The notes under the pieces were generated by a model. It was not told where the DNA came from and did not search any database. It saw only the letters and a program-made list of their open reading frames with translations. 64,000 nt of DNA, taken from Rebecca billardiae RCC1528 (Eukaryota; Protista; Haptophyta). The stretch covers positions 124,001 to 188,000 of the forward strand of contig OZ251255.1 in the NCBI GenBank assembly GCA_965240325.2. The letters run 5' to 3'. Both the position numbers and the translations under genes were made by a program. Each line of letters begins with the position of its first letter. Positions within the stretch are counted from its first letter, which is position 1. Below, piece after piece: positions 9,001 to 54,556 of this stretch.

Positions 9001-12000
9001 GCCCCCCGCCGTCGCCTCCGCCGAGCCCGCCTCCGAGCCCGCCGCCGAGCCCGCCGCCGCCCTCGCCGCCGCCGAGCCCACCGCCAAGCCCACCACCATC
9101 GCCGCCACCGCCGCCCTCGCCGCCGCCGTCTCCGCCGCCGAGCCCACCGCCGTCGCCTCCGCCCAGCCCGCCACCTTCGCCGCCACCCAGCCCGCCGCCA
9201 TCGCCACCGCCGCCGTCGCCGCCTCCGTCCCCGCCGCCATCGCCGCCGCCGAGCCCGCCGCCGAGCCCGCCTCCGCCGTTGCTTCCGCCGCTGCCGCCTC
9301 CATCGCCGCCGCCCAGCCCTCCGCCCAGCCCTCCACCGCCGTCGCCACCCCCGTCGCCTCCACCGAGTCCGCCGCCATCGCCGCCGCCGAGCCCGCCGCC
9401 GTCACCGCCGCCGAGCCCGCCGCCAAGCCCGCCGCCGAGCCCGCCGCCGCCCTCGCCGCCGCCGAGCCCACCGCCAAGCCCACCACCATCGCCGCCACCG
9501 CCGCCCTCGCCGCCGCCGTCTCCGCCGCCGAGCCCACCGCCGTCGCCTCCGCCCAGCCCGCCACCTTCGCCGCCGCCCAGCCCGCCGCCATCGCCACCGC
9601 CGCCGTCGCCGCCGCCATCGCCACCGCCATCGCCGCCGCCGAGCCCGCCGCCGAGCCCGCCGCCGCCGTTGCTTCCGCCGCTGCCGCCTCCATCGCCGCC
9701 GCCCAGCCCTCCGCCCAGCCCTCCACCGCCGTCGCCACCCCCGTCGCCTCCACCGAGTCCGCCGCCATCGCCGCCGCCGAGCCCGCCGCCGTCACCGCCG
9801 CCGAGCCCACCGCCAAGCCCGCCGCCGAGCCCGCCGCCGCCGTCACCGCCGCCGAGCCCACCGCCAAGCCCACCACCATCGCCGCCACCGCCGCCCTCGC
9901 CGCCGCCGTCTCCGCCGCCGAGCCCACCGCCGTCGCCTCCGCCCAGCCCGCCACCTTCGCCGCCACCCAGCCCGCCGCCATCGCCACCGCCGCCGTCGCC
10001 GCCGCCGTCCCCGCCGCCATCGCCGCCGCCGAGCCCGCCGCCGAGCCCGCCGCCGCCGTTGCTTCCGCCGCTGCCGCCTCCATCGCCGCCGCCGAGCCCT
10101 CCGCCCAGCCCTCCACCGCCGTCACCACCCCCGTCGCCTCCACCGAGTCCGCCGCCATCGCCGCCGCCGAGCCCGCCGCCGTCACCGCCGCCGAGCCCGC
10201 CACCAAGCCCGCCGCCGAGCCCGCCGCCGCCCTCGCCGCCGCCGAGCCCACCGCCAAGCCCACCACCATCGCCGCCACCGCCGCCCTCGCCGCCGCCGTC
10301 TCCGCCGCCGAGCCCACCGCCGTCGCCTCCGCCCAGCCCGCCACCTTCGCCGCCGCCCAGCCCGCCGCCATCGCCACCGCCGCCGTCGCCGCCGCCATCG
10401 CCACCGCCATCGCCGCCGCCGAGCCCGCCGCCGAGCCCGCCGCCGCCGTTGCTTCCGCCGCTGCCGCCTCCATCGCCGCCGCCCAGCCCTCCGCCCAGCC
10501 CTCCACCGCCGTCGCCACCCCCGTCGCCTCCACCGAGTCCGCCGCCATCGCCGCCGCCGAGCCCGCCTCCGTCACCGCCGCCGAGCCCGCCGCCAAGCCC
10601 GCCGCCGAGCCCGCCGCCGCCGTCACCGCCGCCGAGCCCACCGCCAAGCCCACCACCATCGCCGCCACCGCCGCCCTCGCCGCCGCCGTCTCCGCCGCCG
10701 AGCCCACCGCCGTCGCCTCCGCCCAGCCCGCCACCTTCGCCGCCACCCAGCCCGCCGCCATCGCCACCGCCGCCGTCGCCGCCGCCGTCCCCGCCGCCAT
10801 CGCCGCCGCCGAGCCCGCCGCCGAGCCCGCCGCCGCCGTTGCTTCCGCCGCTGCCGCCTCCATCGCCGCCGCCGAGCCCTCCGCCCAGCCCTCCACCGCC
10901 GTCGCCACCCCCGTCGCCTCCACCGAGTCCGCCGCCATCGCCGCCGCCGAGCCCGCCGCCGTCACCGCCGCCGAGCCCGCCACCAAGCCCGCCGCCGAGC
11001 CCGCCGCCGCCCTCGCCGCCGCCGAGCCCACCGCCAAGCCCACCACCATCGCCGCCACCGCCGCCCTCGCCGCCGCCGTCTCCGCCGCCGAGCCCACCGC
11101 CGTCGCCTCCGCCCAGCCCGCCGCCTTCGCCGCCACCCAGCCCGCCGCCATCGCCACCGCCGCCGTCGCCGCCGCCGTCCCCGCCGCCATCGCCGCCGCC
11201 GAGCCCGCCGCCGAGCCCGCCGCCGCCGTTGCTTCCGCCGCTGCCGCCTCCATCGCCGCCGCCCAGCCCTCCGCCCAGCCCTCCGCCGCCGTCGCCGCCA
11301 CCGTCGCCACCGCCGAGCCCGCCGCCCTCGCCGCCGCCGAGCCCGCCTCCGTCACCGCCGCCGAGCCCGCCACCAAGCCCGCCGCCGAGCCCGCCGCCGC
11401 CCTCACCGCCGCCGAGCCCACCGCCAAGCCCACCACCCTCGCCGCCACCGCCGCCCTCGCCGCCGCCGTCTCCGCCACCGAGCCCTCCGCCGTCGCCTCC
11501 GCCCAGCCCGCCACCTTCGCCGCCACCCAGCCCGCCGCCATCGCCACCGCCGCCGTCGCCACCGCCGTCCCCGCCGCCATCGCCGCCGCCGAGCCCGCCG
11601 CCGAGCCCGCCCCCGCCATTGCTTCCGCCGCTGCCGCCTCCATCGCCGCCGCCCAGCCCTCCGCCCAGCCCTCCGCCGCCGTCGCCACCGCCCTCGCCAC
11701 CGCCGAGCCCGCCGCCCTCGCCGCCGCCGAGCCCGCCGCCGTCACCTCCGCCGAGCCCGCCGCCGTCGCCGCCGCCGAGCCCGCCGCCACCCTCGCCGCC
11801 GCCGAGCCCACCGCCGAGCCCACCACCATCGCCGCCGCCGCCGCCCTCGCCGCCGCCGTCTCCGCCCCCGAGCCCACCGCCCTCGCCTCCGCCCAGCCCG
11901 CCGCCGTCGCCGCCACCCAGCCCGCCGCCATCGCCACCGCCGCCGTCGCCACCGCCGTCCCCGCCGCCATCGCCGCCGCCGAGCCCGCCGCCGAGCCCGC

Positions 12001-12900
12001 CGCCGCCGTTGCTTCCGCCGCTGCCGCCTCCATCGCCGCCGCCGAGCCCTCCGCCCAGCCCTCCACCGCCGTCGCCACCCCCTTCGCCTCCACCGAGTCC
12101 GCCGCCATCGCCGCCGCCGAGCCCGCCGCCGTCACCGCCGCCGAGCCCGCCACCAAGCCCGCCGCCGAGCCCGCCGCCGCCCTCGCCGCCGCCGAGCCCA
12201 CCGCCAAGCCCACCACCATCGCCGCCACCGCCGCCCTCGCCGCCGCCGTCTCCGCCGCCGAGCCCACCGCCGTCGCCTCCGCCCAGCCCGCCACCTTCGC
12301 CGCCACCCAGGCCGCCGCCATCGCCACCGCCGCCGTCGCCGCCGCCATCGCCACCGCCATCGCCACCGCCGAGCCCGCCGCCGAGCCCGCCCCCGCCGTT
12401 GCTTCCGCCGCTGCCGCCTCCATCGCCGCCGCCCAGCCCTCCGCCCAGCCCTCCGCCGCCGTCGCCGCCACCGTCCCCACCGCCGAGCCCGCCGCCCTCG
12501 CCGCCGCCGAGCCCGCCTCCGTCGCCGCCGCCGAGCCCGCCTCCGAGCCCGCCGCCGAGCCCGCCGCCGCCCTCGCCGCCGCCGAGCCCACCGCCGAGCC
12601 CGCCGCCGTTGCCGCCGCCGCCGCCCTCGTTGCCGCCGTCTCCGCCGCCAAGTCCGCCGCCGTCGCCTCCGCCCAGCCCGCCGCCTTCGCCGCCACCCGG
12701 CCCGCCGCCATCGCCACCGCCGCCGTCACCACCGCCATCGCCTCCGCCCTCGCCGCCGCCGAGCCCGCCGCCGAGCCCGCCGCCGCCGTTGCTTCCGCCG
12801 CTGCCGCCTCCATCGCCGCCGCCCAGCCCTCCGCCCAGCCCTCCACCGCCGTCGCCACCCCCTTCGCCCCCACCGAGTCCGCCGCCATCGCCGCCGCCGA
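1..12900 (+). repeat. Coding tandem array with a 390-bp (130-aa) unit of S(P)3-5 blocks punctuated by LLPPL; at least 33 units
   Basis: The marker ttgcttccgccg recurs at 309+390n for n=0..32 (309, 699, 1089 ... 12789) with no phase slip. The array decays into irregular Pro/Ser/Ala sequence from about 12900 to 13550. Confidence 0.97.
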
Positions 12901-40890: not shown

Positions 40891-41703
40891 TGCACGGCGT
40901 ACGGCCGCCCGTCGTGGGTGCGCCGAGCTTGGCCCGAGGTGCGCGCGCGCACTTGCGTGCGCGTGCGCGTCCGTGGGACAGCCACAGGTGCCGGCGGCGG
41001 CGAGGCGCTCACAGTGCGCCGCGCCCCGCGCGCGGTGTGTCGCAGCAGGTGCGCCGCACTGCCGCAGTGTGTCTGGTGGTCGGAGCCCCGTCCACCTCCC
41101 TCGGCCTCCGCCCGCCTCGCGCTCCAGGGCCGTCTCGACTTCGAGCGGCCTGTCTGGCTGCCTGCTGAAGCATCGGCTCACGTCCGCGCGCAGCGTCCGC
41201 GACCGCCGCGTGCCGGGCCACTCCGGGCTCAACGTCGGACAACAAGCCTCGGCCCGTCGCGCCGATTGCTCCCGAATGTCAGTGCCGTCGGCTGCGCCTG
41301 TGGATTCTCCCGGGCACTCGCAGCTTGCCCGCCAATGCGCCGCCTCGTGCGCCGCCCGCGCGCCGAGGGTGGCGGCCCCGGAATCCATCATCGTCAGCAT
41401 GCAGTTTTCGTGCCCCTGAACCCGAAGGTTTCTTACTTAGCTGCGTAACGACAGCTATCGAGAGGGCGGTACCTGTAGCTAGGTTCAAGGTGGGTACTCA
41501 GAGCCGTTATTGTAGATAAACGGCAGCCATCCTGCCCGCCGCTCAGCTTCGACGCTGCGAGCTGGGCGGAGAGGGCCGGCTCACACCAACCCCCCCGAGG
41601 CCGGCATCGCTTGGCCGGGAGGGCGCAACCGCCGCACCGGCCCCGCGCCCCGCAGGCGCAGGACGGGGCCGAGCGCGCGCACGCGCGCGGGCGGGCGGGC
41701 GGG

Positions 41704-44700
41704 ATGAAGGCCACCCGCGCCATCTCCACCGCGCCCACCTCGCGCGCGGGCAACACGAGCCGCCGGCCGCCGCCGGCCGCGCCGAGCCGCGCCGAGCAGC
41801 GGTTTGGCTGGCTGCACCAGCTCGCGCGCCGCGCGCTGCTGGGCGAGTCGCCGGCGGACGCGCGCCGGCGCGGCGCGGCGCGCGGGCTGAAGCCGGCCAT
41901 CCGCCTGCCCGGCGTGGACAAGCGCGCGCGGAAGGCCGCCAAGGTCTCGTGGCGCACGCCGCTCGAGGGCGGCGACGACGAGAGTGAGGAGGAGAAGCAG
42001 CGGCGGCGCGAGGCGGAGGCGGAGCTGCGCGAGAAGTGGCTCCGCACGTACCGCGCGCTGCGGCTGCCGGCGCTGACGTACGAGATGCTCTGCGTGCCGC
42101 TCCGCCTCGCGTTCCCCTCCATGACCATCTCCGGCCCCGCCTTTGTCGCGCTCGACCTCACGGTCGACATCTTCGAGCTGTTTGTGATCGCGTTCAACGC
42201 GCGCGCGGAGGCGTCGGCGCGGCGCGAGCTGCCGCAGGAGGAGCTGCTCGCCGTGGGGTTCGGGGCGTACCCGTACACCCTCGGCCGCATGGCGCCCGAC
42301 CTCCTCGCCATCCTCGTCCTCTGGGCCGGGCGCGCGCTGCTGTGGTCGGGCGTGACGCGCTGGCTCTGGTACGCGGCCGGCGCGGCGCGCGTGCTGCGCA
42401 TCAAGGACCTGGTGGAGTACGTCGCGCTGATGAACGCGGACCTGTCGACGAACGTGACGTTCCTCGCCGTGTACAAGTTCACCCTCGTCCTCTTCGCCGT
42501 GCCGCACTGGGTGGGCTGCGCGTGGTGGATGCTCGCCGAGCACACCTCGTCGATGCAGCTGCCCTCGTGGTCGGCGCAGTTCTTCCTCGCGTCGAGGAAC
42601 ACGGCGCTCGACCCGATCCGCGCGAGCGCGGAGGAGCGATGTGCGCGCACGCGCGCGCGGCGCGGCGCGCGCGCAAGGCACGCCGCCGCGCCCACGCCCA
42701 CCACGCGCCGCCGCGCCGCCGCGCCGCCCCCTCCGCCGCCCCCTCCGCCGCCGCCCCCTCCGCCGCCGCCCCCTCCGCCCCCTCCGCCCGCAGACCTGCT
42801 CTCGACGTACATGGCGTGGACGGGCGTGACGGCGCTGGGGTACGGCTCGGTGGTGGTGACGGAGAAGCAGGACCTCGCCTTCGCCATCCTGATCTGCATG
42901 GTCCAGATCGTCTTCTACGCGTACGTGCTCGGCACGCTCTTCCACTACCTCGTGCGCGTGGACGAGAACACGGTGCGGTTCAAGGAGCTGATGAAGGCGG
43001 TGGAGGAGTACTGCCTGACGCGCGGGCTGCCCGGGGCGGTGCAGAAGAAGATCCGCACGCACTTCGAGTTCCAGCACCGCAAGAACGCCTCGGGCACCGA
43101 GAAGGTCTTCAACCAGATGCCGCGCTCGCTCAAGGTGAAGGTGGCGTCCGCGCAGTACTACAAACACGTGCAGAGCGCGTGGGTCATGCAGCGCTGCCAC
43201 CCGCAGTTCCTGAGCCAGGCGGTGATCGCGCTCAAGGAGCGGTACGTGATGCCGCTCGAGACGCTCTTCAACCGCGGCGACGGCTCGCGCGAGCTGCTCT
43301 GGTGCGTCGGCGGCTCGCTGCACGTGCGGAAGGGCGACGTGCACGTGACGACCGTGCGCTCAGACCTCGGGCCTGGCCAGATCGTGGGCGAGATCGCCTT
43401 CTTCCTGGGGATCCAGCAGCCGTACACGGTGGGCGCGACGGGCGCGGGGGACGTGACGCTGCTCGTGCTCTCGGGCGTCGACTACGACGACATCCTCACC
43501 TCGTACCCCGAGCAGGCCGACATGATCACGCAGAACCTTCTGCGAAAGTTCGGGCTGGACAAGAACGGGCACGAGCTGGCGGAGAACTCGTCGCCCGCGT
43601 CTGCGCTCTCGCAGGCGCTGGCGCAGCTGGACGACGACGAGCGCGAGGAGTTCGAGCAGCTCAAGGCGCTGGTGAAGGACGCGATCACGCGGCGCAACGA
43701 GGAGGCCCTCGCGCAGATGACCTACGCCGCCTCCGAGGGCGACATTGACTCGGTGCGCGCGCTCGCCGCGCGCGGGCTCGATCTCGACACGGGAGATTAC
43801 GACCAGCGCACCACGCTCCACCTCGCCGCCGCCGAGGGGAACACGAAGGTGGTGGCGCTGCTGTGCTCGCTCGGCGCCAACCCGAACGCGCACGACCGCT
43901 GGGGCGCCTCGCCGCTGCAGGACGCGATCGAGGTGCGCGCCGGGGGCGGGGGCGCGGGCGCGGTCGCGGGCTGCGCGGGCGCGGGCGTGTGCGCGGCCGC
44001 GGGCTTGGCCGCGCGAGCCGGGCCGCGCGGCGCGCGCGGCGCGCCCACGCGGCCGACGTGCGCACCCATCCCCGCCTCCCTCACACGCCTCCTCCCCCTC
44101 CAACCCTCCCTCCACGCACACACCCCAACCCCATCCCCCCGGCGCGCGCAGGGCCACCACGCGTCGGTCGCGGCCGAGCTGCGCGAGCGCGGCGCCCGGC
44201 TCGTCCTCGAGAACCCGGCGTCCATGCTGAACGAGGCGGCGTCGCGCGGGGACGTGTCGTACATCGCGACGCTGCTCGAGCACGGCATCGCGATCGACTG
44301 CAAGGACTACGACCGGCGCACCGCCATGCACCTCGCCGCCGCCGAGGGCAACCTGCGCGTCGTCGAGTTTTTAATCTCGAGGTTGGCCGACGTGAACGCG
44401 ACCGACCGCTGGGGCAAGACGCCGATCGACGACGCGATCTCGAACCAGCGCACGCTGGTCGCGCCGCTGCTGCACAAGGCGGGCTCGCGCCCGCGCAAGC
44501 GCGGGCTCACCGAGCGCCTCTGCCACGCCGCCTCCACCGGCGACTTTGACCGCCTCCGGCTGATCGTCGAGGCGGGCGCGTACATTGACGAGGGCGACTA
44601 CGACTCTCGCACAGCGCTGCACCTCGCCGCCGCGAGCGGCGGTATCTCGGCGGTGCAGTTTCTGCTCGGCGCGATGGCGGACCCGAACTCGGCGGACCGG

Positions 44701-46719
44701 TGGGGCAACACGCCGCTCGTCGACGCGCTCGAGACCTCCTCCGAGACCGCCGCTCTGCTGCTGCACAACGGCGCACGGCTGCCTGAGCGGCTGCAGGGCG
44801 ACGCGCACTACCAGCGGCTGCTGCAGCACGCGCGCTCGCTCGACATGTACAGGGTGAACCGCGCGCTGCAGCGGCGCGTGGCGCGGCGCGTGCAGGGGGA
44901 GGAGGACAAGCAGAACGCGCGGCGCGAGCTCGGCCTCGCCTTCGAGGGCCTCACCCACGACATGGGCCGGCTGCTGCACACGCTCACGCCGCTGTACGCG
45001 TCGCTGCTCAAGCACGCGCCCGCGTGGGTGCACACGTACGCGATCGAGGCGCCGGGCGGCGCGGACGACGACGAGCTGGACGAGCTGGACGACCTGGACG
45101 AGCTGGCGGACGAGCTGGGCTACGGCGGCGGCGCGAGCTCGCCCGGCCGGTACGGCGCCGCCGCCGTCCTCGGCCCGCGCGGCGCGCAGGTGCGGCGGCG
45201 CGGGTCGAACGACGGGCGCGGCGGCGGCGGCGGGCCGCCGGGTGTCGCCGGGCTCGTCGCGGCGCGGCACAGCTCGAAGGCGGGCGGCGGCGGGCGCGCG
45301 AGCAGCGGCGGCGGGGGCACGATGGCGGACGCGACGATGACGCGCCGCTCCTTCATCCGCATCGTCCTCCAGCTGCCCAAGGCCGAGGCCGGGCTGATCG
45401 CCCTCCGGCGCTTGTTTGACGACGCGATGGACGGTGCCGCTGCCGCCGGCCGCGCCGAGAAGTCTCTCTCGGCGCTCGGGCTCGGGCGCTCGTCGGGCTC
45501 GGGCGTGACGTTCGCGGAGGGCGCGCGGCCGCCGGCGCGCAAGCACTCGTCGAGCCACGCCAACGGCGGCGCCCCCGCGCCCACGCCGCCCGGGCCGAAC
45601 GGCCCCGCGGCGGCGGGCGGCGGCGGGCGAGCGGCTGGGCGCGTGCCCGCGCCCGCTGGGATCGGCGGGATCGGCGGCGCGTTCGTCGCCGTGCAGTACG
45701 AGCGGCAGGCGGCGGCGGGGGGCGCGAGTATGGACGGGCGGCTGCCGCTGAGCACCTCGGCCGCGGCGGGCGGCGCGGGGCCCGCCGCGTACTCCATCCC
45801 GCTGCCGGGCAGCCCGGCCGCGGGCGGGCGCGGCGCCGGCGCCGGGTGCGGCGGGTGCGGGGGCGGCGGCGGGTGCGGCGGCGGCGGCGGCAAGATTCCG
45901 CTGCCCGGCTCGGCGATGGCGGCGGTGGCGGCGGCGGCCGCCGGGCGGATCCCGCTGCCCGGCAGCGGCGGCGGCGCCGGGCTGGGCCCGGGCGCGAGCT
46001 GCTCCGAGCCGAACACGCCCAAGCCCTCGCTGCTCTCGGCCGCGGGGCCGTCCGACGGCGCGCCGGACCCGCTGTCAGCGGAGGCGCTCGCGGCGCTGCC
46101 GTCCGACCTGGCCGCGGACGTGCGGCGGCGCAAGCGCGAGGAGGAGTACCTGAAGGACGCGCTGCGGAACAAGCTGCGCTTCGACGCGTCCGTCGCCGCG
46201 GCGGTGCTCTCCGAGGTGCACGAGCAGCTCCGGCAGTTCCTCGGCGCGGGCGCGCCGCCGCTCGCGCGCGCCGCCGCGCTGCAGGCCGCGGCGCACGCGG
46301 CCGAGCGCGCGCGACGCGGCGCGCGGCCCGAGCGGCGCGGCTCGGGCGCGGAGCGGCGCGGCTCGAGCGCGGCGCAGCCGACATCGCCGTCGGGCAGGCG
46401 CGCGCCCTTCGTGCGCTCGGGCAGCGTCCTCGGCTCCGGCTCGGCGCACGGCGCGCCCCCCAACGGCACGCGCCGAGGCTCGAAGAGCGCCGCGGCCGCG
46501 GCCGCCGCAGCCGCAGCCGCCGCCGCGTCCGCACAGGACTCCGAGCCCTCGCCGGACTCCGACGCGCGGCCGGTGGCGGACAGGGGGGGGCGCGCGGCGG
46601 GGCGCAAGGCGCAGGCGAAGGGCTGGCTCTTCTCCGCCGGGCGGATGGGCCGGCAGATGTCGCAGAACATGGGCGAGGCCGTCGCGGCGATGCACGCCGG
46701 AGCGGACGAGGATGACGAG

Positions 46720-46765
<46 letters not shown>

Positions 46766-49700
46766 GCAGCGGCGGCGGCGGCGCGGCGGGCTTGGGCGCG
46801 CGCCGCGGCTCCGCCGAGCACGGCCGCGCGTCTGCGAGCACGGCGGAGGAGGAGGGCGGCGAGGAGGAGGCGGAGCCGCCGCTCAGCATCCCGTACCTCG
46901 CCGACCTCGGCTTCCTCGTCCTCCTGTGCTCGCACACACTCGTCGAGTCTCTGCGCGAGCGCGAGGCGCTGCGGCAGCGGCGCGGCGGCGCGGAGGCGGC
47001 GCCGACGCCGACCAAGTCGGCGGCGAGCGGGCGGCGCGGGCCGCGGCAGTCGATCCTGGACCGCGTGCGCGGGCGCGGCGCGCGCGGCACGATGGGCGAG
47101 GACGACGAGGACGACATCACCTCCGAGCCCGCCACGCCCGTCTCCACGGCCTCCGCCGCGCTCGGCCGCACCGGCTCGGTGGCCGGCTCGACGCCTTCCG
47201 TGAGCTCGACGCCCGACGCCGGGCGGCGCGCGCGCGTCGCGCCGGTGGGCGCGGGCTTCGGCAGCGCGGGCGGGCTCGGCACGCCGCCCGGCGCGCGGCG
47301 CAGGCTGCGCCCCGGCTCGATCCGGCGCAACTCGCGCGGCGAGGCTGAGGGGCGAGGCGGCTCGGACGGCGGCGCGGCCTCGCCCGAGGTGGCCCGCTCC
47401 TCGCAGGCGTCCACGCCGACCGGCGGCGCCGAGCGCCTCAACGGCGGCGGCGGCGGCGCGCAGGGCAGCTGGAGCGGCGGGCGGAGCGGCGGGCTGGGCA
47501 CGGCGGGCAAGACGCTCACCTCGAGCGCGTCGATCCGCCTCAAGACCGCCGCCTCCGCCTTCGCCTCGGTGGCGGGCAACTCATCGTTCAACCTCGGCGG
47601 CGGCGGCGGCGGCAGCGCCGACGGCGACTCGCGCCGCGGCGGCCAGTCCGAGCGCACGCTGGACGAGAGCCTCTCGCCCGACCCGGTCGCGTCGCGCGCC
47701 GCGACGGCCGCGCGCCCCGCCGACAGGGCCACCGTGATCGCCGAGGGCATCGCCGTGCTCGACGCCATGTTCCGCACGCTCGATGTCGGCTCGACCAACC
47801 ACATCCGCATCAGAGACGTGAAGCCGCTGGCCGGCACGCTGGGCGAGCTGGGCGACGCGGAGATCCGCTCGCTGCTGCGCTTCCTCGCGGACGCGTCCGC
47901 GTCGTCCGGGCCGCTCGCGGCGGGGCGGCTGCTCGGCAACGAAGGCGGCGGCGGCGGCGGTGGAGGCGGCGGCGGCGGCGGCGGCGCGGGCGCGCGCGGC
48001 GGCGGCGGCGCGGACGAGGCGGCGGGCGGCGGCGGCGCGCGCGGCGCCGTGGTGGAGGGCGAGCCGCTGCCGAGCGGCGCGGGCGGCGAGGCGGTGGCGG
48101 CGGAGGGCGGCGGCGTGCTCGCGGGCCGGCCGCTCAGCCGCGAGCACGAGTGCGCCGACGTCGCCGACTCGTACCGCGTGCGCAGCGGGCGCACGCCGCT
48201 GAGCGCGCCCACCGGTCGGCGCGGCTCGACGGTCGCGCCTGAGCCGGGCGGCGGCGCGGGCGCGCGCGGAGGCGCGGGCGGCGCGGCGGAGGCGGCGGCG
48301 GGCGGCGGCGGGGGCGGCGGCGAGGGCGGTGGCGCGGGGCGTGGCGGGCGGCTCTCGGTCGCCGTGCCCGAGGAGGGCGCGGGCATGCCGGCGACCAGCA
48401 CCGACGGCCGCGACGACGCTGACGAGGCCGCGGCCGCCGCGGTCGCGCGCGCGGCCGAGCACACCGCCGCGGCGCGCGCCGCCGGCCGCCGCTCTGTGCT
48501 CACGCGCGCGCAGTTCAACGTGGGCGCGGCGCAGTGGATCCTGGGCACGGTGGGCTCGGCGGAGGGCGAGGGCGGCGGCGCCGGCGGGCGCAACTCGGCC
48601 GCCGACCCCGCCGTGCCGCTCCTCTCGCTCGGCGGGCCGGCGGGCGGCGGCGCGCGCGGCGTAGGCGGCCGGCTGTCTGCCGCTGGCGGCGGCGGCGGCG
48701 GGTTTGGCGGCCTCAGCCTCAAGGACGCGGTGTTCAGGGCGGTGGACGACGCGGAGCAGTCGGCGCAGCACGCGCTGCAGATGGCCTTCTCCACCGCGCC
48801 CGCGCTGCACGCGCTCGCCGACGGCGTGCGCTCGCTCATCCGCGTCGGACGGATCGCGCGCGACTCCCCCGTCGAGTCGTCCGAGCTGCCGTCCATCGCG
48901 GCCGACGCGGCGATCGCGGCGGGGCGGCCTCTCACCGCCGAGCTGCGCCCGTCGGACGTGGAGGGGTGGATCATGACGACGCTGCACCTCGAGGTGGGCG
49001 CGGTCGCCGCCGCCGCGGCGGCGAAGCGCGGCAAGGGCGCCGTCGCCACGGGCGGCTGGACCGCCACCCTCTCCTCCGCGGGCTCGACCAAGGGGGGCTC
49101 TGTGAAGGTCGGCGGCGCGGGCGCGCCCACCGGCGCGTCGTGGCGCGCGCTCGAGCGCGCGCTGCGCGACGCGGCGGACGAGCTGACCGCCGCGGCGCTG
49201 GCGGGCGCGAAGGAGGGCGGGGACGGCGGCGGCGGCGGCGGCGGCGGCGGGCTCGCCGGCGCGCTGCTCGGCGCCGCGGGCGCCAAGAAGGGCGGCTCGC
49301 CGTCGGGCGGCGGCGCCAAGGGCACCCATCCGATGAGCGCGTCGGAGCGGCTGGAGGCGGCCGCGCGCCAAAAGTCGCTCAAGGCGACGATCCTGCAGAT
49401 GCTGTACGGCGACGGCAGCGCGGGCGGCGGCGGGCTCGCCGCGCGCAAGTCCACCATGTTCTCCATCAACCGCCGCCCCTCCTTCATCGTCTCGCACACC
49501 TCCGCGCCGTACGTGCGCTTCCACCGCACGATGCTGGTCGTGACGGCGTGGACGGCGCTCGTGCTGCCAGTCGAGCTGTGCTTCTTCAGACAGTCGCGGC
49601 TGCTCACGTGGCTGCCCGCGGTGAACTACACGTGCGACGCGGTGTACTGGGCGAAGATCGGCCTCGGCTTCTGCGTCTCGTACGTCAACACCAAGTCCGT

Positions 49701-50638
49701 CACCGTCAACGACCCGCACAAGATCCGCAAGCACTACCTGGCCACCGACTTTCCGTTCGACGCGGGCGCGTCGCTGCCGCTCGACCTGTTCGCGCTCGCG
49801 CTCGGCGCGAGCCCGCTCATGTACACGCTGCTGCGGCTGCCGCGGCTGACGTACGTGCGGTACCTGCGCACCGCGTACGCCGCGTGGGAGAAGGCCAACT
49901 CCTCCGACGACCTCGGCCTCGGCCTCGTGCGCTACCTCACCATCCTGCTCGTCACCGGCCACGTGGGCGCGTGCCTGTGGAACGTCTTTGGGTACTCCGC
50001 CTACGCCGACACGGCGGAGGCGACGTGGGCGGACCAGTACTACGAGGACGTGCGCGACGTGGGCGGGCTGCCGCCGCAGGACTCGGACGGCCCGATGCTC
50101 GTGCTCACGCACCACTACCTCGTCGCGATGTACTTCATCATGTCGATGCTCACCACGCTCGGGATGGCGCAGGTGCCGTCCAACTTCGCCGAGCTCGCGT
50201 ACTTTTTATTCATCATGGTGCTCAACCTGACGGTGTACGCGTGGGCGGTCGGCAAGATCTCCGCGCTCGTGATGAAGCAGGACGACGAGATCGTGCAGAA
50301 GCGCGGGCAGCTCGAGCTCGTGCAGGCGTACATCTCGCACATCAAGGTGCCGCAGGAGCTCAAGGAGGACATCGAGCTCTTCTTCCACTCCAGGCTCGAG
50401 GACGCCTCGCTCACGACCGTGCGCGATGAGTCCATCTACGATGCAATGCCGATCGCACTGCAGGTGTGCGGGCAGAGCGCTGCCGCCGCCACGGCCGCGG
50501 CTGCCGCAGCCGCTGCGCGCGCGCGCCGCGACCGCCGCGCGCTCAGCCCGTGCCCGTGCCGCGCGGCCACGCGCCGACGGTGCCGCCGTGCGGTGTGCGT
50601 GTGCTGGTGTGCGTGTGTGCGTGTGCGTGTGTGTGTGC

Positions 50639-50672
<34 letters not shown>

Positions 50673-50731
50673 GCGTGTGTGTGTGTGTGTGTGCGTGTGT
50701 GTGTGTGCGTGTGTGTGTGCGTGTGTGTGTG

Positions 50732-50778
<47 letters not shown>

Positions 50779-50805
50779 GTGTGTGTGCGTGTGTGTGTGT
50801 GTGTG

Positions 50806-50866
<61 letters not shown>

Positions 50867-51572
50867 GTGCGTGTGTGTGTGTGTGTGTGTGCGTGTGTGT
50901 GTGTGTGCGTGTGTGTGCGTGTGTGCGTGTGTGTGTGTGTGCGTGTGTGTGTGTGCGTGTGTGTGTGTGCGCGTGCGCGTGTGTGTGCGTGTGTGCGCGT
51001 GCGTGTGTGCGTGGCTGTGCTCTGCTGCCCGCAGATCGAGGTGTCCAAGTACACCAACAGGGCGCTCGTCGCGGAGGCGGCGATCGTCGCGGGCTGCGCC
51101 GACGCCTTCCTCGACCGCATGTCCTCGCTGCTCAAGGAGCGCACCCTCGAGCCCGAGACCGCCCTCTTCCGTGCGACCGAGGCGGCGCGCGAGCTCTTCC
51201 TGATCGACTCGGGCGCGGTCGAGGTGTACGAGGAGGAGGGCGACGGGAGCCACGCGGCGGAGCCGCAGCGCGTGCTCGGCGTGGGCGAGACGGTGGGCGA
51301 GATCTCGTTCGTCTTCGGCATGCGCCACTACAACAACGCCAGGTCCGCCTCGGACGTCGAGACCAAGGTGCGCGCGCGCGCGCCGTGTGGGTGCGAGCGC
51401 GCGCGCGCCGTGGGGCGGCGCCGCCGCCGCCGCGCGCCGCCGCACCTCCGCAGGGCGGACGGCGCGCGCGGTGCGGTGTGTGCGCGGCTCCTCGCGAGGG
51501 GGTTCTCGCTGCCCAGCGCCGCTCCCGCCGATGTGACACACACACACACACACGCACACACACACACACACG

Positions 51573-51632
<60 letters not shown>

Positions 51633-54556
51633 CACGCACACACACACACACACACATACACACACACGCACACATACGCACACGCACACACGCACACACA
51701 CGCGCAGGTGTTCCTGCTCTCCTCCGAGGACTACAAGCTGCTGCTCAAGATCTTCCCGCAGCAGGAGGACATCGTGATGAACAACGTGATGAGCGGCTAC
51801 GACGGTAAGCGTTGCGGCCTGGGCTGCACGGGGCTGGGTGCGGGTGTGCGGGCGGGCGTGCGTGCGCGGCAGGCGGCGCGCACACCACCGCGCCACCGCC
51901 GCGCCAGCGGGTGTGCGGGCGGGCGGGCGGGCGCGGCAGGCGGCGCGCACACCACCCCGCCGCCGCCGCACCACGCAGCGCGCGCACGGGCGGGCGGGCG
52001 AATCGCGCGCGCGCCGCGAAGGCAGGGGCGGCGACTGCGGCAGCGCGCGCGCCCTCCGCGCGCCGGCGCGCGCGCACGCACACATGCCAAACCGCCCCCC
52101 CCCCCCCCCCCCCCCCCCCCCCCGCGCACGCACGCCCGCCCGCCGCGCGCACCGCACCAGGCGTGGGCACCGCGCGCACGCGCACCTCGCGCGGCGACCG
52201 CAACTCGGCGGCCGCCGCGCGCACCGAGTCTGTCGACGGCGACGGCGGCTCTGAGGACGGCGGCTCTGACGGGCCCGCCTCGTCTGCGCGATTCTCGGGC
52301 GGCGAGGGCGGAGACAAGGCGAACGCCGGGCAGGAGATCACGGGCAACGCCATCCAGAAGGTGCGACTGAGCGAGCGCGCGAGGCGGCGCGCGCCCACCC
52401 CGCGGCCGGCAGCCCGCCACGCCAGCAGCGCGCGCGCGCGCGGACGCTCCGCGCGGCGCGCTCAGCTGCCGCGCGCGCGCCCCCGTGTCGCCCCACCCAC
52501 CCCACCCACCCCAGATGATCTCCGCCGCGAAGAAGAAGCGCACGGACGCGTACATCGTGCGGCTGTGCGAGGCGTGCGCCAAGGGCGACGTGAGCGCGAT
52601 CGAGCGGCTCGTCTCCGCCAACTCGCTCGACGTGAACCGCGGCGACCACGACAACCGCCGCGGCATCCACCTCGCCGCGTGCGGGGGCCACGTGCAGGCG
52701 GTCGAGCTGCTCATCGCCTTCGGCGCGACGGTGAACGTGACCGACTCGCGCGGAGGCACGCCGCTCGCCGACGCGCTGCGCCACCGGCAGCACAAGGTGT
52801 GCGAGGTGCTGCGCAGGCACGGCGCCAAGCTCATGTACAACGACACGGCCGAGCGGCTCAACTTTGCGGCGGGCGACGCGGACGGCTTCGACGAGCTCAA
52901 GTCGCTGCTGCAGTACGGCTGCGACCCGAACTCGCTCGACTACGACCAGCGCACGCCGCTGCACCTGGCCGCGTCGGTGGGGCACGTGCCCAACCTGCGG
53001 CTGCTGCTCGAGATGCGCTCGGACGTGAACGCGATCGACAAGTGGGGCGCGTCGCCGCTGCAGGAGGCGTTCCGCAACCAGCACGTCGAGTGCTCGCGCA
53101 TCCTGCTCGAGGCGGGCGGCAACGTCGGCGACTTTTACGCCGCGTCGCGGCTGTGCGCCGCCGCGGCCAACGACGACGTCGACCTGCTCAAGCGGCTGGT
53201 CGAGCACCGCGTCGACCCGAACGACGCGACGATGGACGGGCGCACCGCGCTGCACCTCGCCGCGGCGAACACGCGCCTCGCCGCCGCGCACTACCTCCTC
53301 ACGCGCCCCGGGATCGTCGTGAACCCGCTCGACCGTTACGGCAACACGCCGCTGGACGACGCGGAGCGGCAGGTGGGCGTGGACCAGCCGGTCGTGGTGG
53401 CGCTGCTGCAGACGCGCAAGGCGGAGCGCGGCACGCACGTCGCGCGGCTCAAGTCGGGCGCGGAGCAGGACTTTGAGGAGCGCAAGTTCCGCGAGGACGC
53501 CGAGCTGATCGAGTTCCAGCGGCGGCAGCTTGAGCAGATCCGCGACTTCCGCAAGTGGGCGGAGGGCGAGACGCGCGGCGCGCGCCGGCTCAAGGCGCGT
53601 GTCGACGCGATCCTGCGGCTCGAGTCGGAGCAGGGCTCGGTGATCACCGACGCCGAGCCGTCCTTCTGGCCCGAGCTGCAGGCGTACGTGCGCGAGCACC
53701 AGGGGCGGTACCGCTACCTCGTCGAGACGCTGCAGCGCACGACGCGCGAGTGGCGGCTGCAGATGGACCAGTTCGCGTACGCGTCGCATCACGACATGGA
53801 GAAGAACTTTGCGAGGCTCAGGGTGCGCGGCGCGGCCGCGCGCGGCGGGCGTGGGGTGGTGTTCGCAGGCATGGCGCGCGGCTCGCGCACCCGCGCCGCT
53901 CGCTCGCTCGCTCGAGCCGACCCGCCCTGCCCGTGCCCCCTTCTCGTGCGTGCGTGTGCGTGTGCGCGCGCGTGTGTGTGTGCGCGCGTGCGTGCGCGCC
54001 GCAGCTGAACGAGCTGGTGCGCCTCAACGAGGGCGTGTTCAACCCGTTCGAGTCGGTCGCAGAGTCCACCTTCCTGAGCGCGGAGGCGGAGGAGGAGTCG
54101 GAGGCCGCGACGCCCGCGCCGCAGGCCGAGGCGGCCGGCTCGGAGCCGGGCACGCCCGCCTTCCTGCGCGCGCTGCGGCAGGGGCAGGCGGTGGCGTCGG
54201 CGGGAAGCGCGCTCGCCGGCCTCGCCGAGAAGCGGCGCATGGCGCGCACCTCGCTCCCGCCGGGCGTGGGCGCAGGCACAGGCACGCCCGACCGCCGCGC
54301 GGCGCGGAGCAGCGCGAGCGTCGGCGGCAACGCGCAGCCGCCGCAGCAGCAGCCGGGCGGCGCCGCCCCCGCCGCGCACCGCTCCGCCTCGAGCCCCGCG
54401 CCGGGCGGCGGCGCCGGCGCCGCGCCGATGACGGAGGAGGACATCGCGGCGGCCGCGCTCGAGGCGCTGAGCGGCGGCGGCGCGGGCGCGGCGCAGCAGC
54501 CGCAGCAGCCGCGCCGAACGACGCCGCCGACCAACCGCCGCTCCTCCGCCGCGTAG
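41704..54556 (+). CDS. Tandem two-module cyclic-nucleotide-binding-domain/ankyrin cation (K+-type) channel, ~3,625 aa, 8 exons (introns 42641-42793, 43933-44151, 50464-51034, 51368-51707, 51805-52160, 52361-52514, 53823-54004)
   Basis: Module 1 has TM helices, pore YMAWTGVTALGYG, C-linker, CNBD (LFNRGD...GQIVGEIAFF) and ankyrin repeats (DYDQRTTLHLAAAEG, DRWG..PL). Module 2 has TM helices (S4-like LLRLPRLTYVRYLR), pore YFIMSMLTTLGMA, C-linker, CNBD (GETVGEISFVF) and ankyrin repeats (DYDQRTPLHLAA, DRYGNTPL). Seven GT-AG introns give a 10,878-nt open frame. Confidence 0.88.
50592..51012. repeat. (GT)n/(GTGC) microsatellite in channel intron 3
   Basis: About 420 bp of gtgtgt/gcgt; it explains the spurious VCVCVC translations. 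Confidence 0.97.
51536..51704. repeat. (CA)n microsatellite in channel intron 4
   Basis: About 170 bp of cacaca/cgca ending at the acceptor. Confidence 0.97.
52095..52123. repeat. Poly-C tract (29 nt) in channel intron 5
   Basis: Seen directly. Confidence 0.95.

What the first reader, a model, noticed from the sequence alone, without database searches (positions are those of the whole stretch)
41704..54556. Two complete AKT/KCNH-like channel subunits fused in one polypeptide, with an asymmetric selectivity filter
Seen: [6TM-pore-C-linker-CNBD-ankyrins] occurs twice, joined by a low-complexity linker of about 1,500 aa with no stop. Filter 1 is TALGYG (42829-42846) and filter 2 is TTLGMA (50152-50169). 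Established: plant AKT-type channels have one such module and tetramerise, and K+ selectivity needs TxGYG/GFG from four subunits; CNGK channels have four repeats. Inference: a dimer would build a two-fold pore with alternating GYG/GMA loops, a hard-wired heteromer with probably altered selectivity or gating. I do not know this as a characterised channel class.
Basis: partly seen in the sequence, partly recalled or inferred. Interest (0 to 1): 0.82.

Follow-up and report, generated by a model that had tools for sequence, protein, structure and literature searches.

The report
Doubled Shaker-like ankyrin channel gene
A very GC-rich alga, probably a haptophyte, has one gene that joins two different plant-type ion-channel subunits into a single ~3,600-residue protein; it is one of about 42 such genes in this genome and belongs to an old, widespread, never-tested algal channel family.

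Summary
Window 41704-54556 (+) is one eight-exon gene of about 3,625 codons.

The ~1,570-codon linker is coding. Third-position GC stays at 0.93-1.00 in one frame throughout, and that frame has no stop (500 shuffles gave at least 3).

No RNA run was listed for this organism. A relative's intronless 8.1-kb MMETSP transcript carries the same collinear architecture in one complete ORF.

The family is not rare. I found about 27 long proteins from haptophytes, green algae, cryptophytes, Rhodelphis and ochrophytes, and 42 paired loci in this genome. First and second modules form two separate, mirrored clades beside plant Shaker channels.

The asymmetry is family-wide:
- Module 1 has a GYG loop, a charge-poor S4 and a plant-type CNBHD without the phosphate-binding Arg.
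- Module 2 never has Y/F in its loop, and has a fuller S4 and a conserved Arg.

The linker holds a degenerate EF-hand.

A 2+2 single pore is inferred; co-folding gave only weak support. Two-repeat tandem CNBD channels were reported from sequences in 2020, in other lineages. This scan already reported paralogues in this genome. I rate it a new variant of a known kind.

The parts
41704..54556 (+). Whole coding region. Eight exons: 41704-42640, 42794-43932, 44152-50463, 51035-51367, 51708-51804, 52161-52360, 52515-53822, 54005-54556. Total 10,878 nt, or 3,625 codons plus a TAG stop.
   Evidence: GC3 periodicity. Collinear tblastn of the orthologue P0002. GT-AG junctions and reading phases. Lower-GC, aperiodic DNA flanks both ends.
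42073..42534 (+). Module 1, S1-S5. S4 lies at 42361-42432 and has only R, R, K.
   Evidence: AlphaFold2 model of 41995-42639, pLDDT 88.3. The 50 Foldseek matches listed are all CNBD-family channels. The two S4 Arg are invariant in 20 relatives. Alignment.
42641..42793 (+). Intron 1: 153 nt, in frame, stop-free, Pro-rich if translated.
   Evidence: GTGCGC...CAG boundaries. Splicing restores a Tyr and a pore helix that match P0002.
42796..42954 (+). Module 1 pore helix, filter TALGYG (42829-42846) and S6.
   Evidence: phmmer alignment to GORK and SKOR, E 3.5e-41 for the exon. Coordinates.
42955..43554 (+). Module 1 C-linker and plant-type CNBHD. The PBC-like stretch with QQPYTV lies at 43384-43437.
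   Evidence: Pfam cNMP_binding, 28.5 bits. Alignment to GORK. Family alignment of the PBC.
43717..44781 (+). Module 1 ankyrin repeats, interrupted by intron 2 (43933-44151, 219 nt, in frame).
   Evidence: Pfam Ank_2, 1.1e-37. Intron boundaries.
44776..49482 (+). Inter-module linker of about 1,570 codons. G and A together make up 41% of residues 45001-49482. Conserved islands lie at 45343-45417, 46882-46920, 48499-48543 and 48712-48996.
   Evidence: 0 stops and GC3 of at least 0.93. Islands shared with P0002, P0006, P0014 and P0001.
47737..47901 (+). EF-hand-like island in the linker, with loop DVGSTNHIRIRD.
   Evidence: Conserved in at least 16 paralogous loci. A profile of 7 relatives hits centrin and calmodulin EF-hands at 8e-11. 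Weak Pfam EF-hand_7 matches in 6 of 7 members.
49483..50274 (+). Module 2, S1-S6. S4 lies at 49828-49878 with four Arg. Filter TTLGMA lies at 50152-50169.
   Evidence: Pfam Ion_trans, 5.5e-10. phmmer to hERG 2.9e-16, AKT5, HCN1 and KAT1, with GMA aligned on GFG.
50275..51804 (+). Module 2 C-linker (to 50463) and CNBD (exons 51035-51367 and 51708-51804). The PBC with a conserved Arg-His lies at 51293-51352.
   Evidence: Pfam cNMP_binding, 36.8 bits. tblastn of P0002. PBC alignment.
50464..51707 (+). Introns 3 and 4, which flank the 333-nt CNBD exon. They carry TG-rich and CA-rich microsatellites that are about 90% complementary over 171 nt.
   Evidence: Boundaries.
52515..54556 (+). Module 2 ankyrin repeats (about 52560-53372), a charged helical tail and the low-complexity C-terminus. 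Intron 7 lies at 53823-54004.
   Evidence: Pfam Ank_2, 1e-40. tblastn of P0002, 8.6e-82. Exon model.

Best explanation
The locus is one intact gene for a tandem channel subunit. Its order is module 1 (S1-S6, C-linker, CNBHD, ankyrin), a long regulatory linker with a degenerate EF-hand, then module 2 (S1-S6, C-linker, CNBD, ankyrin, helical tail).

Shown:
- one reading frame with a coding signature throughout;
- the same architecture on a relative's mature transcript;
- an ancient family in which first and second modules have evolved in parallel.

Inferred: two chains dimerise into a pseudo-tetramer around one pore, with modules 1 and 2 alternating, as in TPC channels, K2P channels and the plant AKT1-AtKC1 2:2 heteromer. 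The pore would then have two A-L-G-Y-G loops and two T-L-G-M-A loops. It would be a cation pore that passes K+ but is probably less K+-selective than a Shaker channel.

The modules appear specialised. Module 2 carries the better voltage sensor and a CNBD that keeps a conserved Arg. Module 1 has a charge-poor S4 and a plant-type CNBHD that is probably ligand-free. The linker is where family members carry sensor domains: EF-hand pairs in green-lineage members, LOV/RGS arrays in giant paralogues. In this gene it may pass on a Ca2+ or protein-binding signal.

My confidence that this is one fused polypeptide is about 0.9. My confidence in a 2+2 single pore is about 0.6. My confidence in reduced K+ selectivity is about 0.5.
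For: One gene:
- GC3 is 0.93-1.00 without interruption in one frame across the linker.
- The gene frame has 0 stops, against at least 3 in 500 shuffles.
- All splice sites are canonical and the phases fit.
- P0002 (2,647 aa) is collinear from module 1 to the module 2 ankyrins.
- P0002 sits as a single ORF, 2-7945, on an 8,108-nt transcript contig labelled complete by MMETSP.

Family:
- About 27 proteins of 1,927-4,039 aa were found. Most show two pore loops and a few are fragments.
- This genome has 42 loci in which a module-1 hit lies upstream of a module-2 hit on the same strand, with none unpaired.

Parallel evolution:
- The module 1 clade (22 rows), the module 2 clade (23 rows) and the plant Shaker clade each have SH-aLRT 100. 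Lineages are mirrored between the two module clades.
- The two modules are only about 24% identical to each other, but 45-57% identical to their orthologous modules.

Asymmetry:
- Pore loops.
- S4 charges.
- PBC motifs: QQPYTV, as in plant Shakers, against the conserved Arg-His of module 2.

Linker:
- EF-hand-like island.
- Canonical EF-hand pairs just before module 2 in Myrmecia and Pycnococcus members.
- A LOV domain in the same frame before module 2 in a paralogue.

Assembly:
- Co-fold of P0002 pore 1 x2 with pore 2 x2 scored 0.45, with a best control of 0.00. The runs share at least 68% of their contacts and the partner's pLDDT is at least 53. The verdict was weak support.
- Plant AKT1 homotetramers already adopt two alternating conformations, with 2-fold symmetry (PMC9515098). 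GORK does too (PMC12742848, abstract).
- AKT1-AtKC1 forms a 2:2 heteromer (bioRxiv 10.1101/2024.12.27.630498, abstract).
Against: - There is no RNA or protein evidence from this organism; no sequencing run was listed.
- Assembly, stoichiometry, ion selectivity and gating are all untested. The co-fold result is weak. Any two related pore domains might score alike, because the controls were unrelated proteins.
- A 600-1,570-aa linker places no geometric constraint on assembly, so each module could just as well join a pore of its own kind.
- The EF-hand loop lacks a ligand side chain at position 3 (Gly), so Ca2+ binding is doubtful.
- The role of module 2's PBC Arg rests on an alignment that could be off by one residue.
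Confidence: 0.6

Rival explanations
1. Twin-pore assembly. Four chains come together, and modules 1 and 2 each form their own homotetrameric pore. One would be GYG-type and one GMA-type, tethered side by side by the linkers.
For: Both modules are complete: S1-S6, C-linker, CNBD and ankyrin. The very long flexible linker would allow this arrangement. Single-module CNBD channels tetramerise with their own kind (PDB entries listed).
Against: No tandem channel class that I know of works this way; TPC, K2P, CNGK and Cav/Nav all place their repeats around one pore (my own knowledge; also the discussion in PMC7576140). Module 2 loops have lost the aromatic residue in 24 of 24 loci, while module 1 keeps GY in 12 of 12. 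That pattern fits complementary half-filters better than two independent pores. The co-fold placed the two pore domains together, though weakly.
Confidence: 0.2
2. Module 2 is a built-in silent or regulatory subunit. It co-assembles in the pore but mainly damps or retunes gating, as AtKC1 does for AKT1. Its odd loop would then matter little for selectivity.
For: In plants a silent Shaker subunit, AtKC1, forms 2:2 heteromers with AKT1 and inhibits it (bioRxiv 10.1101/2024.12.27.630498, abstract; PMC9515098). Module 2 loop positions 5-6 vary widely among paralogues (L/M/V/A/I/S/T followed by A/P/S/G/T/V), which suggests relaxed constraint on those residues.
Against: The rest of the module 2 loop is strongly conserved ([TS]x[LI]G..Q.P). 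So are S6, the C-linker, S4 and the PBC Arg across all lineages. That does not look like a decaying subunit.
Confidence: 0.15
3. There are two adjacent genes, or two transcripts from an internal promoter, that merely share an open frame in very GC-rich DNA.
For: Long chance ORFs are common in this window. No transcript data exist for this organism. One relative's contig (P0001) shows a module-2-only protein preceded by LOV/RGS domains.
Against: GC3 is at least 0.93 without a break, and the linker has no lower-GC intergenic stretch like those at both gene ends. With no stop codon, gene 1 has nowhere to end. A complete fused ORF sits on a relative's mRNA. All 42 loci are paired, and the linker islands are conserved. 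P0001 has an internal exact duplication and starts inside a LOV domain. In this genome the LOV-bearing loci have module 1 upstream in one open frame, so P0001 is probably a truncated assembly.
Confidence: 0.05

Closest known systems
[quoted passage not shown] 2020, PMC7576140; sequence analysis only)
   Same: Both have two 6TM-CNBD repeats in one polypeptide. The repeats are less than 30% identical to each other. First and second repeats form separate clades with parallel branching. Neither has functional data.
   Different: Those channels have TVGYG-like filters in both repeats, and the paper does not mention ankyrin repeats. They were found only in SAR lineages. Here the modules are plant-Shaker-like with ankyrin repeats. 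The second loop has lost the aromatic residue and the last Gly. The linker is 600-1,570 aa with an EF-hand-like island. The family occurs in haptophytes, green algae, cryptophytes, Rhodelphis and ochrophytes.
Plant Shaker-type channels SKOR/GORK/AKT1, and the AKT1-AtKC1 2:2 heteromer
   Same: They are the best solved relatives of module 1 (E 3.5e-41) and the best fold matches of its S1-S5. They share the domain order of 6TM, C-linker, CNBHD and ankyrin, and the same Arg-less PBC motif (P/Q)QPYTV. Their cytoplasmic parts also have 2-fold symmetry (PMC9515098; PMC12742848, abstract).
   Different: Plant channels have a single module and canonical T-V-G-Y-G, and Pfam's KHA tail (PF11834) is on record for several of the plant relatives found. 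No KHA match was found here. In the tree, plant Shakers are a separate clade (SH-aLRT 100). Its position relative to modules 1 and 2 is unresolved.
Two-pore channels (TPC1-3)
   Same: Both are tandems of two 6TM repeats that dimerise into a pseudo-tetramer. In TPCs only one of the two voltage sensors is the working one (my own knowledge). That resembles the charge-poor S4 of module 1 against the fuller S4 of module 2.
   Different: TPCs belong to the Cav/Nav-like branch. They have no C-linker, CNBD or ankyrin domains, and their inter-repeat linker is short and holds EF-hands in plants. They are not homologous as tandems.
CNGK, the four-repeat cyclic-nucleotide-gated K+ channel of sperm
   Same: It is a CNBD channel concatenated in one chain, with repeats that have diverged in function.
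   Different: CNGK has four repeats, GYG-type filters, real cGMP gating and no ankyrin repeats. A CNGK-like multi-repeat protein (P0003) falls outside both module clades.

Membership tests
CNBD-channel superfamily (KCNH/HCN/CNG/plant Shaker) | S1-S6 with an S4 and a P-loop, in each module | tested here: met
   Module 2: Pfam Ion_trans 5.5e-10 and hERG 2.9e-16. Module 1: P-loop and S6 align to GORK. Its S1-S5 were confirmed only by the AlphaFold2 model and Foldseek; Pfam and phmmer missed them.
CNBD-channel superfamily (KCNH/HCN/CNG/plant Shaker) | C-linker plus a cyclic-nucleotide-binding-domain fold directly after S6 | tested here: met
   Pfam cNMP_binding scores 28.5 bits in module 1 and 36.8 bits in module 2, against a cut-off of 27.5. 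Alignments.
Plant Shaker K+ channels (AKT/KAT/SKOR/GORK) | Canonical K+ filter T-[VT]-G-Y-G contributed by all four subunits | tested here: not met
   Module 1 reads A-L-G-Y-G, with Ala in place of the Thr. Module 2 reads T-L-G-M-A. The same holds across paralogues.
Plant Shaker K+ channels (AKT/KAT/SKOR/GORK) | CNBHD with an Arg-less PBC (PQPYTV) followed by ankyrin repeats | tested here: met
   Met by module 1 only (QQPYTV, then ankyrin repeats). Module 2 has Arg-His at that place.
Plant Shaker K+ channels (AKT/KAT/SKOR/GORK) | Single-module subunit with a KHA tail, placed inside the plant Shaker clade | tested here: not met
   The chain holds two modules. There is no PF11834 match. Plant Shakers form their own clade, SH-aLRT 100, apart from both module clades.
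Two-repeat tandem CNBD-channels (PMC7576140) | Two diverged 6TM-CNBD repeats in one polypeptide, with each repeat type forming its own clade | tested here: met
Two-repeat tandem CNBD-channels (PMC7576140) | TVGYG-like filter in both repeats, and shared ancestry with the dinoflagellate and oomycete tandems | tested here: not met
   The filter of repeat 2 is not GYG-like.
Cyclic-nucleotide-gated channels | PBC with the phosphate-binding Arg followed by Thr or Ser | tested here: inconclusive
   Module 1 lacks the Arg (QQPY). Module 2 has a clade-wide Arg-His one position from the canonical Arg in my alignment.
EF-hand Ca2+-binding domains (linker island) | Helix-loop-helix with a 12-residue loop carrying oxygen ligands at positions 1, 3, 5 and 12 | tested here: inconclusive
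   The profile hits centrin and calmodulin at 8e-11. The window's loop is D-V-G-S-T-N-H-I-R-I-R-D, with Gly at position 3. The best single-sequence Pfam E-value is only 0.011.

The most novel reading that the evidence does not exclude
This gene belongs to a pan-algal class of obligate 2+2 pseudo-heterotetrameric Shaker-like channels.
- Module 1 supplies a K-type half-filter and a vestigial voltage sensor.
- Module 2 supplies a non-K half-filter, the working voltage sensor and a ligand-competent CNBD.
- The inter-module linker is a plug-in slot for sensors: EF-hands for Ca2+, and LOV/RGS arrays for light in giant paralogues.

The 42-gene expansion would then be a sensory channel repertoire of a haptophyte. 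This copy would be an EF-hand-remnant form with a hybrid, weakly K+-selective pore.
Probability: 0.3. Interest if true: 0.8.

Novelty: new variant of a known kind. Interest (0 to 1): 0.55.

Why it matters
Nature has hard-wired here something that plant physiologists study as an optional assembly: AKT1-AtKC1 heteromers, and the C4-to-C2 symmetry breaking seen in AKT1 and GORK. If the 2+2 pore is real, the family offers a natural system for three questions:
- how two different half-filters set ion selectivity;
- how one live and one vestigial voltage sensor share gating;
- how a sensor domain in an inter-repeat linker controls a Shaker-type gate.

The same scaffold carries LOV arrays in paralogues, so a plain member like this one is the natural control for testing candidate light-regulated channels. 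The family is also a large, unannotated part of the excitability toolkit of ecologically important algae. Public records name its members 'hypothetical protein' or 'potassium channel SKOR'.

Tried and rejected
- RNA evidence. The look-up of sequencing runs on 44600-50400 listed no run, so read laying could not be used. No transcript statement can be made for this organism.
- Pfam on the linker (45301-49500) and on neighbouring ORFs found nothing.
- phmmer of module 1's S1-S5 against the PDB found nothing. A model plus Foldseek was needed instead. Even there the best E-value is only 2.6e-3, although the 50 matches listed are all CNBD-family channels.
- Reading all 42 paralogues. Module 1 loops are known for only 12 loci and module 2 loops for 24. 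The 23-40 kb linkers of the three giant loci were not read.
- Jegla et al. 2018 on plant Shaker evolution is not held in the library.
- Complex prediction gave weak support (0.45 against 0.00). The job used pore domains of the orthologue P0002, not of the window, because intron 1 splits the window's module 1 pore domain.
- The MAFFT alignment of whole linkers misplaced the conserved islands. Local BLAST was used instead.
- 'Two genes sharing a chance ORF' was considered and rejected; see the rival explanations.
- The idea that the linker holds decayed LOV/RGS domains found no support. tblastn of P0001 hit only the channel parts, and Pfam found nothing in 45301-49500.
- The spliced full-length protein was never joined or searched as one sequence. 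All searches were run exon by exon, by reference.
- The search of protein representatives was not used. The word search had already found the family.
Full report
**1. What is there**

The window is extremely GC-rich, 65-86%. Frame 1 is open from 41611 to 51777. Pfam finds cNMP_binding and ankyrin repeats in the first half. In the second half it finds Ion_trans, cNMP_binding and ankyrin repeats, the last two in other frames.

In DNA like this an open frame proves little. The same 16 kb holds 45 ORFs of at least 150 aa, one of them a 1,495-aa antisense ORF. The test that does discriminate is codon-position composition.
- Third-position GC is 0.93-1.00 in every 300-nt window from 41800 to 50500, always in the same frame. 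Second-position GC is much lower.
- The signal vanishes in lower-GC DNA before about 41600 and after 54600, and in the introns of the 3' half.
- The linker (45001-49482) has no stop in the gene frame. The other two sense frames have 14 and 5 stops and the antisense frames 2, 1 and 20. Shuffles gave a mean of 12.6 and never fewer than 3 in 500.

The linker is therefore coding sequence in frame with both modules.

**2. Gene model**

I combined three lines of evidence: a collinear tblastn of the orthologue P0002, the GC3 phase shifts and splice signals.
- The gene has eight exons: 41704-42640, 42794-43932, 44152-50463, 51035-51367, 51708-51804, 52161-52360, 52515-53822 and 54005-54556.
- All seven introns are GT-AG, mostly with GTGCG donors.
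- The phases fit, and the coding length is 10,878 nt, or 3,625 codons plus a TAG stop.
- Exon 3 alone is 6,312 nt. It runs from the module 1 ankyrins through the whole linker into the C-linker of module 2.

Introns 1 (153 nt) and 2 (219 nt) are stop-free multiples of three. The poly-Pro run beside filter 1 is intron. Splicing it out restores a Tyr and a pore helix that match P0002 residue for residue.

Every search was made exon by exon, by reference.

**3. Are both modules complete?**

Module 2:
- S1 to C-linker aligns to hERG (2.9e-16), AKT5, HCN1, KAT1 and GORK.
- G-M-A falls on hERG's G-F-G.

Module 1:
- The pore helix, S6, C-linker, CNBHD and first ankyrins align to GORK and SKOR at 3.5e-41. 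The filter A-L-G-Y-G falls on T-V-G-Y-G, so the filter Thr is Ala here.
- S1-S5 are too diverged for Pfam or for phmmer against the PDB.
- An AlphaFold2 model built on 20 relatives is confident (pLDDT 88.3, five long helices).
- Its 50 best Foldseek matches listed are all CNBD-family channels, with SKOR, GORK and AKT1 first. TM-scores are about 0.5-0.57 and the best E-value is 2.6e-3.

Both modules are therefore 6TM, C-linker, CNBD and ankyrin.

**4. One protein or two?**

No sequencing run was listed for this organism, so there is no direct RNA evidence. The indirect evidence is strong.
- P0002 (2,647 aa) is collinear with the window from module 1 to the end of the module 2 ankyrins.
- It is a single ORF, positions 2-7945, on an intronless 8,108-nt transcript contig that MMETSP labels complete.
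- A word search drawn from module 1, restricted to long proteins, returned about 27 relatives of 1,927-4,039 aa.
- Named sources are Diacronema lutheri, [Myrmecia] bisecta, Pycnococcus provasolii, Cymbomonas tetramitiformis, Bryopsis, Tetraselmis striata, Guillardia theta, Rhodelphis marinus, Nannochloropsis oceanica and Chrysophaeum taylorii.
- BLAST shows a module-1-type and a module-2-type pore loop, 1,200-2,000 residues apart, in most of them. A few are fragments.
- In the window's own 72-Mb genome I paired the hits by hand. There are 42 loci with a module-1 hit upstream of a module-2 hit on the same strand, mostly 4-7 kb apart. No strong hit of either kind is unpaired.

The closest named relatives are from the haptophyte Diacronema lutheri, at 55% identity. 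The window's modules nest among them in the tree. This agrees with earlier scan notes that call the organism a GC-rich haptophyte.

**5. Evolution**

I built a tree of 59 module sequences with the quick IQ-TREE method and the LG+C20 model.
- Module 1 (22 rows), module 2 (23 rows) and land-plant Shaker channels (9 rows) each form one clade with SH-aLRT 100.
- A CNGK-like multi-repeat protein served as the outgroup.
- The order of the three clades is unresolved.
- Within each module clade the same lineage groups recur: ochrophyte, Rhodelphis, haptophyte, and green plus cryptophyte.

The window's modules are 45-57% identical to the matching modules of P0002 but only about 24% identical to each other. 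The tandem thus arose once and long ago, and the two halves have evolved together since. Transfer between algal lineages cannot be excluded.

**6. The asymmetry is a family trait**

| Feature | Module 1 | Module 2 |
|---|---|---|
| Pore loop in this genome | T[AS][LMF]GY[GA] in 12 of 12 readable loci | [TS]x[LI]G, then L/M/V/A/I/S/T, then A/P/S/G/T/V, then Q.P in most loci; 24 of 24, never Y or F |
| Pore loop in other lineages | keeps G-Y (G-N in Rhodelphis; unclear in Nannochloropsis) but often loses the last Gly | varies |
| S4 | two invariant Arg, plus one Lys in the window | four basic residues in the window, four to five in the relatives aligned |
| PBC of the CNBD | (P/Q)QPYTV, the Arg-less motif of plant Shaker CNBHDs | clade-wide Arg-His at or next to the canonical Arg position |

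Module 1 is therefore unlikely to bind cyclic nucleotides. Module 2 might. This last point is an inference from an alignment that could be off by one residue.

**7. The linker**

G and A together make up 41% of its residues, but it is not just a tether. Relatives share islands at 45343-45417, 46882-46920, 47737-47901, 48499-48543 and 48712-48996.
- The island at 47737-47901 recurs in at least 16 paralogues.
- A profile of that island hits centrin and calmodulin EF-hands at 8e-11.
- The window's loop has Gly at ligand position 3, so Ca2+ binding is doubtful.
- Green-lineage members have canonical EF-hand pairs 50-100 residues before module 2.
- In three giant loci of this genome, one open frame of 8,009-13,615 aa covers both modules. 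At one of them, a single frame carries a LOV core with the adduct Cys followed by module 2.
- Other agents of this scan had already described those LOV/RGS arrays.

The linker therefore looks like the place where this family inserts sensor domains.

**8. How it probably works**

Shown: one polypeptide with two different channel modules.

Inferred: two chains form a pseudo-tetramer with alternating modules around one pore.

Support for the inference:
- Every known concatenated channel class works this way (TPC, K2P, CNGK, Cav/Nav). This rests on my own knowledge and on the discussion in PMC7576140.
- Plant AKT1 and GORK homotetramers adopt two alternating conformations with 2-fold symmetry (PMC9515098; PMC12742848, abstract).
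- AKT1-AtKC1 forms 2:2 heteromers (bioRxiv 10.1101/2024.12.27.630498, abstract).
- Co-folding two copies of each pore domain of P0002 scored 0.45, against 0.00 for the best of three controls. The runs share at least 68% of their contacts and the partner's pLDDT is at least 53. The tool rates this as weak support, more often wrong than right unless the guess was likely beforehand.

Two A-L-G-Y-G loops and two T-L-G-M-A loops cannot build the four-fold carbonyl cage of a K+ channel. I expect a cation pore that passes K+ with reduced selectivity. That is unproven.

**9. Known or new**

Two-repeat tandem CNBD channels were reported from sequences in 2020 in dinoflagellates and oomycetes. Those have TVGYG-like filters in both repeats, and the paper does not mention ankyrin repeats (PMC7576140). 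I found no paper on the ankyrin-bearing algal family. Public records call its members 'hypothetical protein' or 'potassium channel SKOR'.

This scan has already reported two paralogues elsewhere in the same genome (s1-332070, s1-355074) and the LOV-bearing giants.

**Verdict:** a real and intact gene; a new variant of a known kind; one of about 42 copies; function untested.

Noticed in passing
G000:C8:1488662-1525621, G000:C8:1555687-1596106 and G000:C3:3525152-3549360 (loci L011, L033-L036): These are three giant paralogues. The module-1 and module-2 hits lie 23-40 kb apart within one reported open frame of 12,933, 13,615 or 8,009 aa. In L011 a single frame holds a LOV core with the adduct Cys (Pfam PAS_9), then Ion_trans, then cNMP_binding. 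They are candidate LOV-bearing tandem channels. Other agents of this scan have already described them.
   Followed up: partly
window 50624-50960 and 51536-51706: Introns 3 and 4 carry TG-rich and CA-rich microsatellites that are about 90% complementary over 171 nt. They bracket the 333-nt, in-frame exon that encodes the module 2 CNBD beta-roll. Pairing in the pre-mRNA could loop this exon out, by skipping or as a circular RNA. Skipping would keep the reading frame.
   Followed up: partly
L002 (protein P0001, 2,567 aa; transcript contig of a relative): The architecture is LOV-RGS-LOV units, then the linker tail, then a module-2-type channel with loop STLGLA. There is no module 1. The first ~560 residues are repeated exactly, and the ORF starts inside a LOV domain. 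It is probably a truncated or collapsed assembly of a giant tandem-channel mRNA.
   Followed up: partly
window 1-12900: This stretch is 84-86% GC with a GC skew of about -0.42 held over 12 kb. The skew switches abruptly to about 0 near 13-14 kb. Another finding of this scan notes a repeated protein-coding array here.
   Followed up: no
L038 (G000:C32:599068-600015) and L037 (G000:C10:968222-971551): These are more distant channel genes in the same genome. The C32 locus has a canonical STVGYGD K+ filter and no paired second module among the hits. The C10 locus gives two weak hits (24-26%) about 2.5 kb apart on one strand.
   Followed up: no
P0003 (4,597 aa, from an ENA metagenome): Pfam finds 8 Ion_trans, 7 cNMP_binding and 7 Ion_trans_2 stretches in one protein. 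It is a CNGK-like concatenated channel with about twice the usual four repeats, or two fused gene calls.
   Followed up: no
window 42641-42793 and 43933-44151: Both 5' introns are exact multiples of three and stop-free. Retaining them would insert 51 or 73 residues, one into the turret before the pore helix and one into an ankyrin repeat, without breaking the frame.
   Followed up: no
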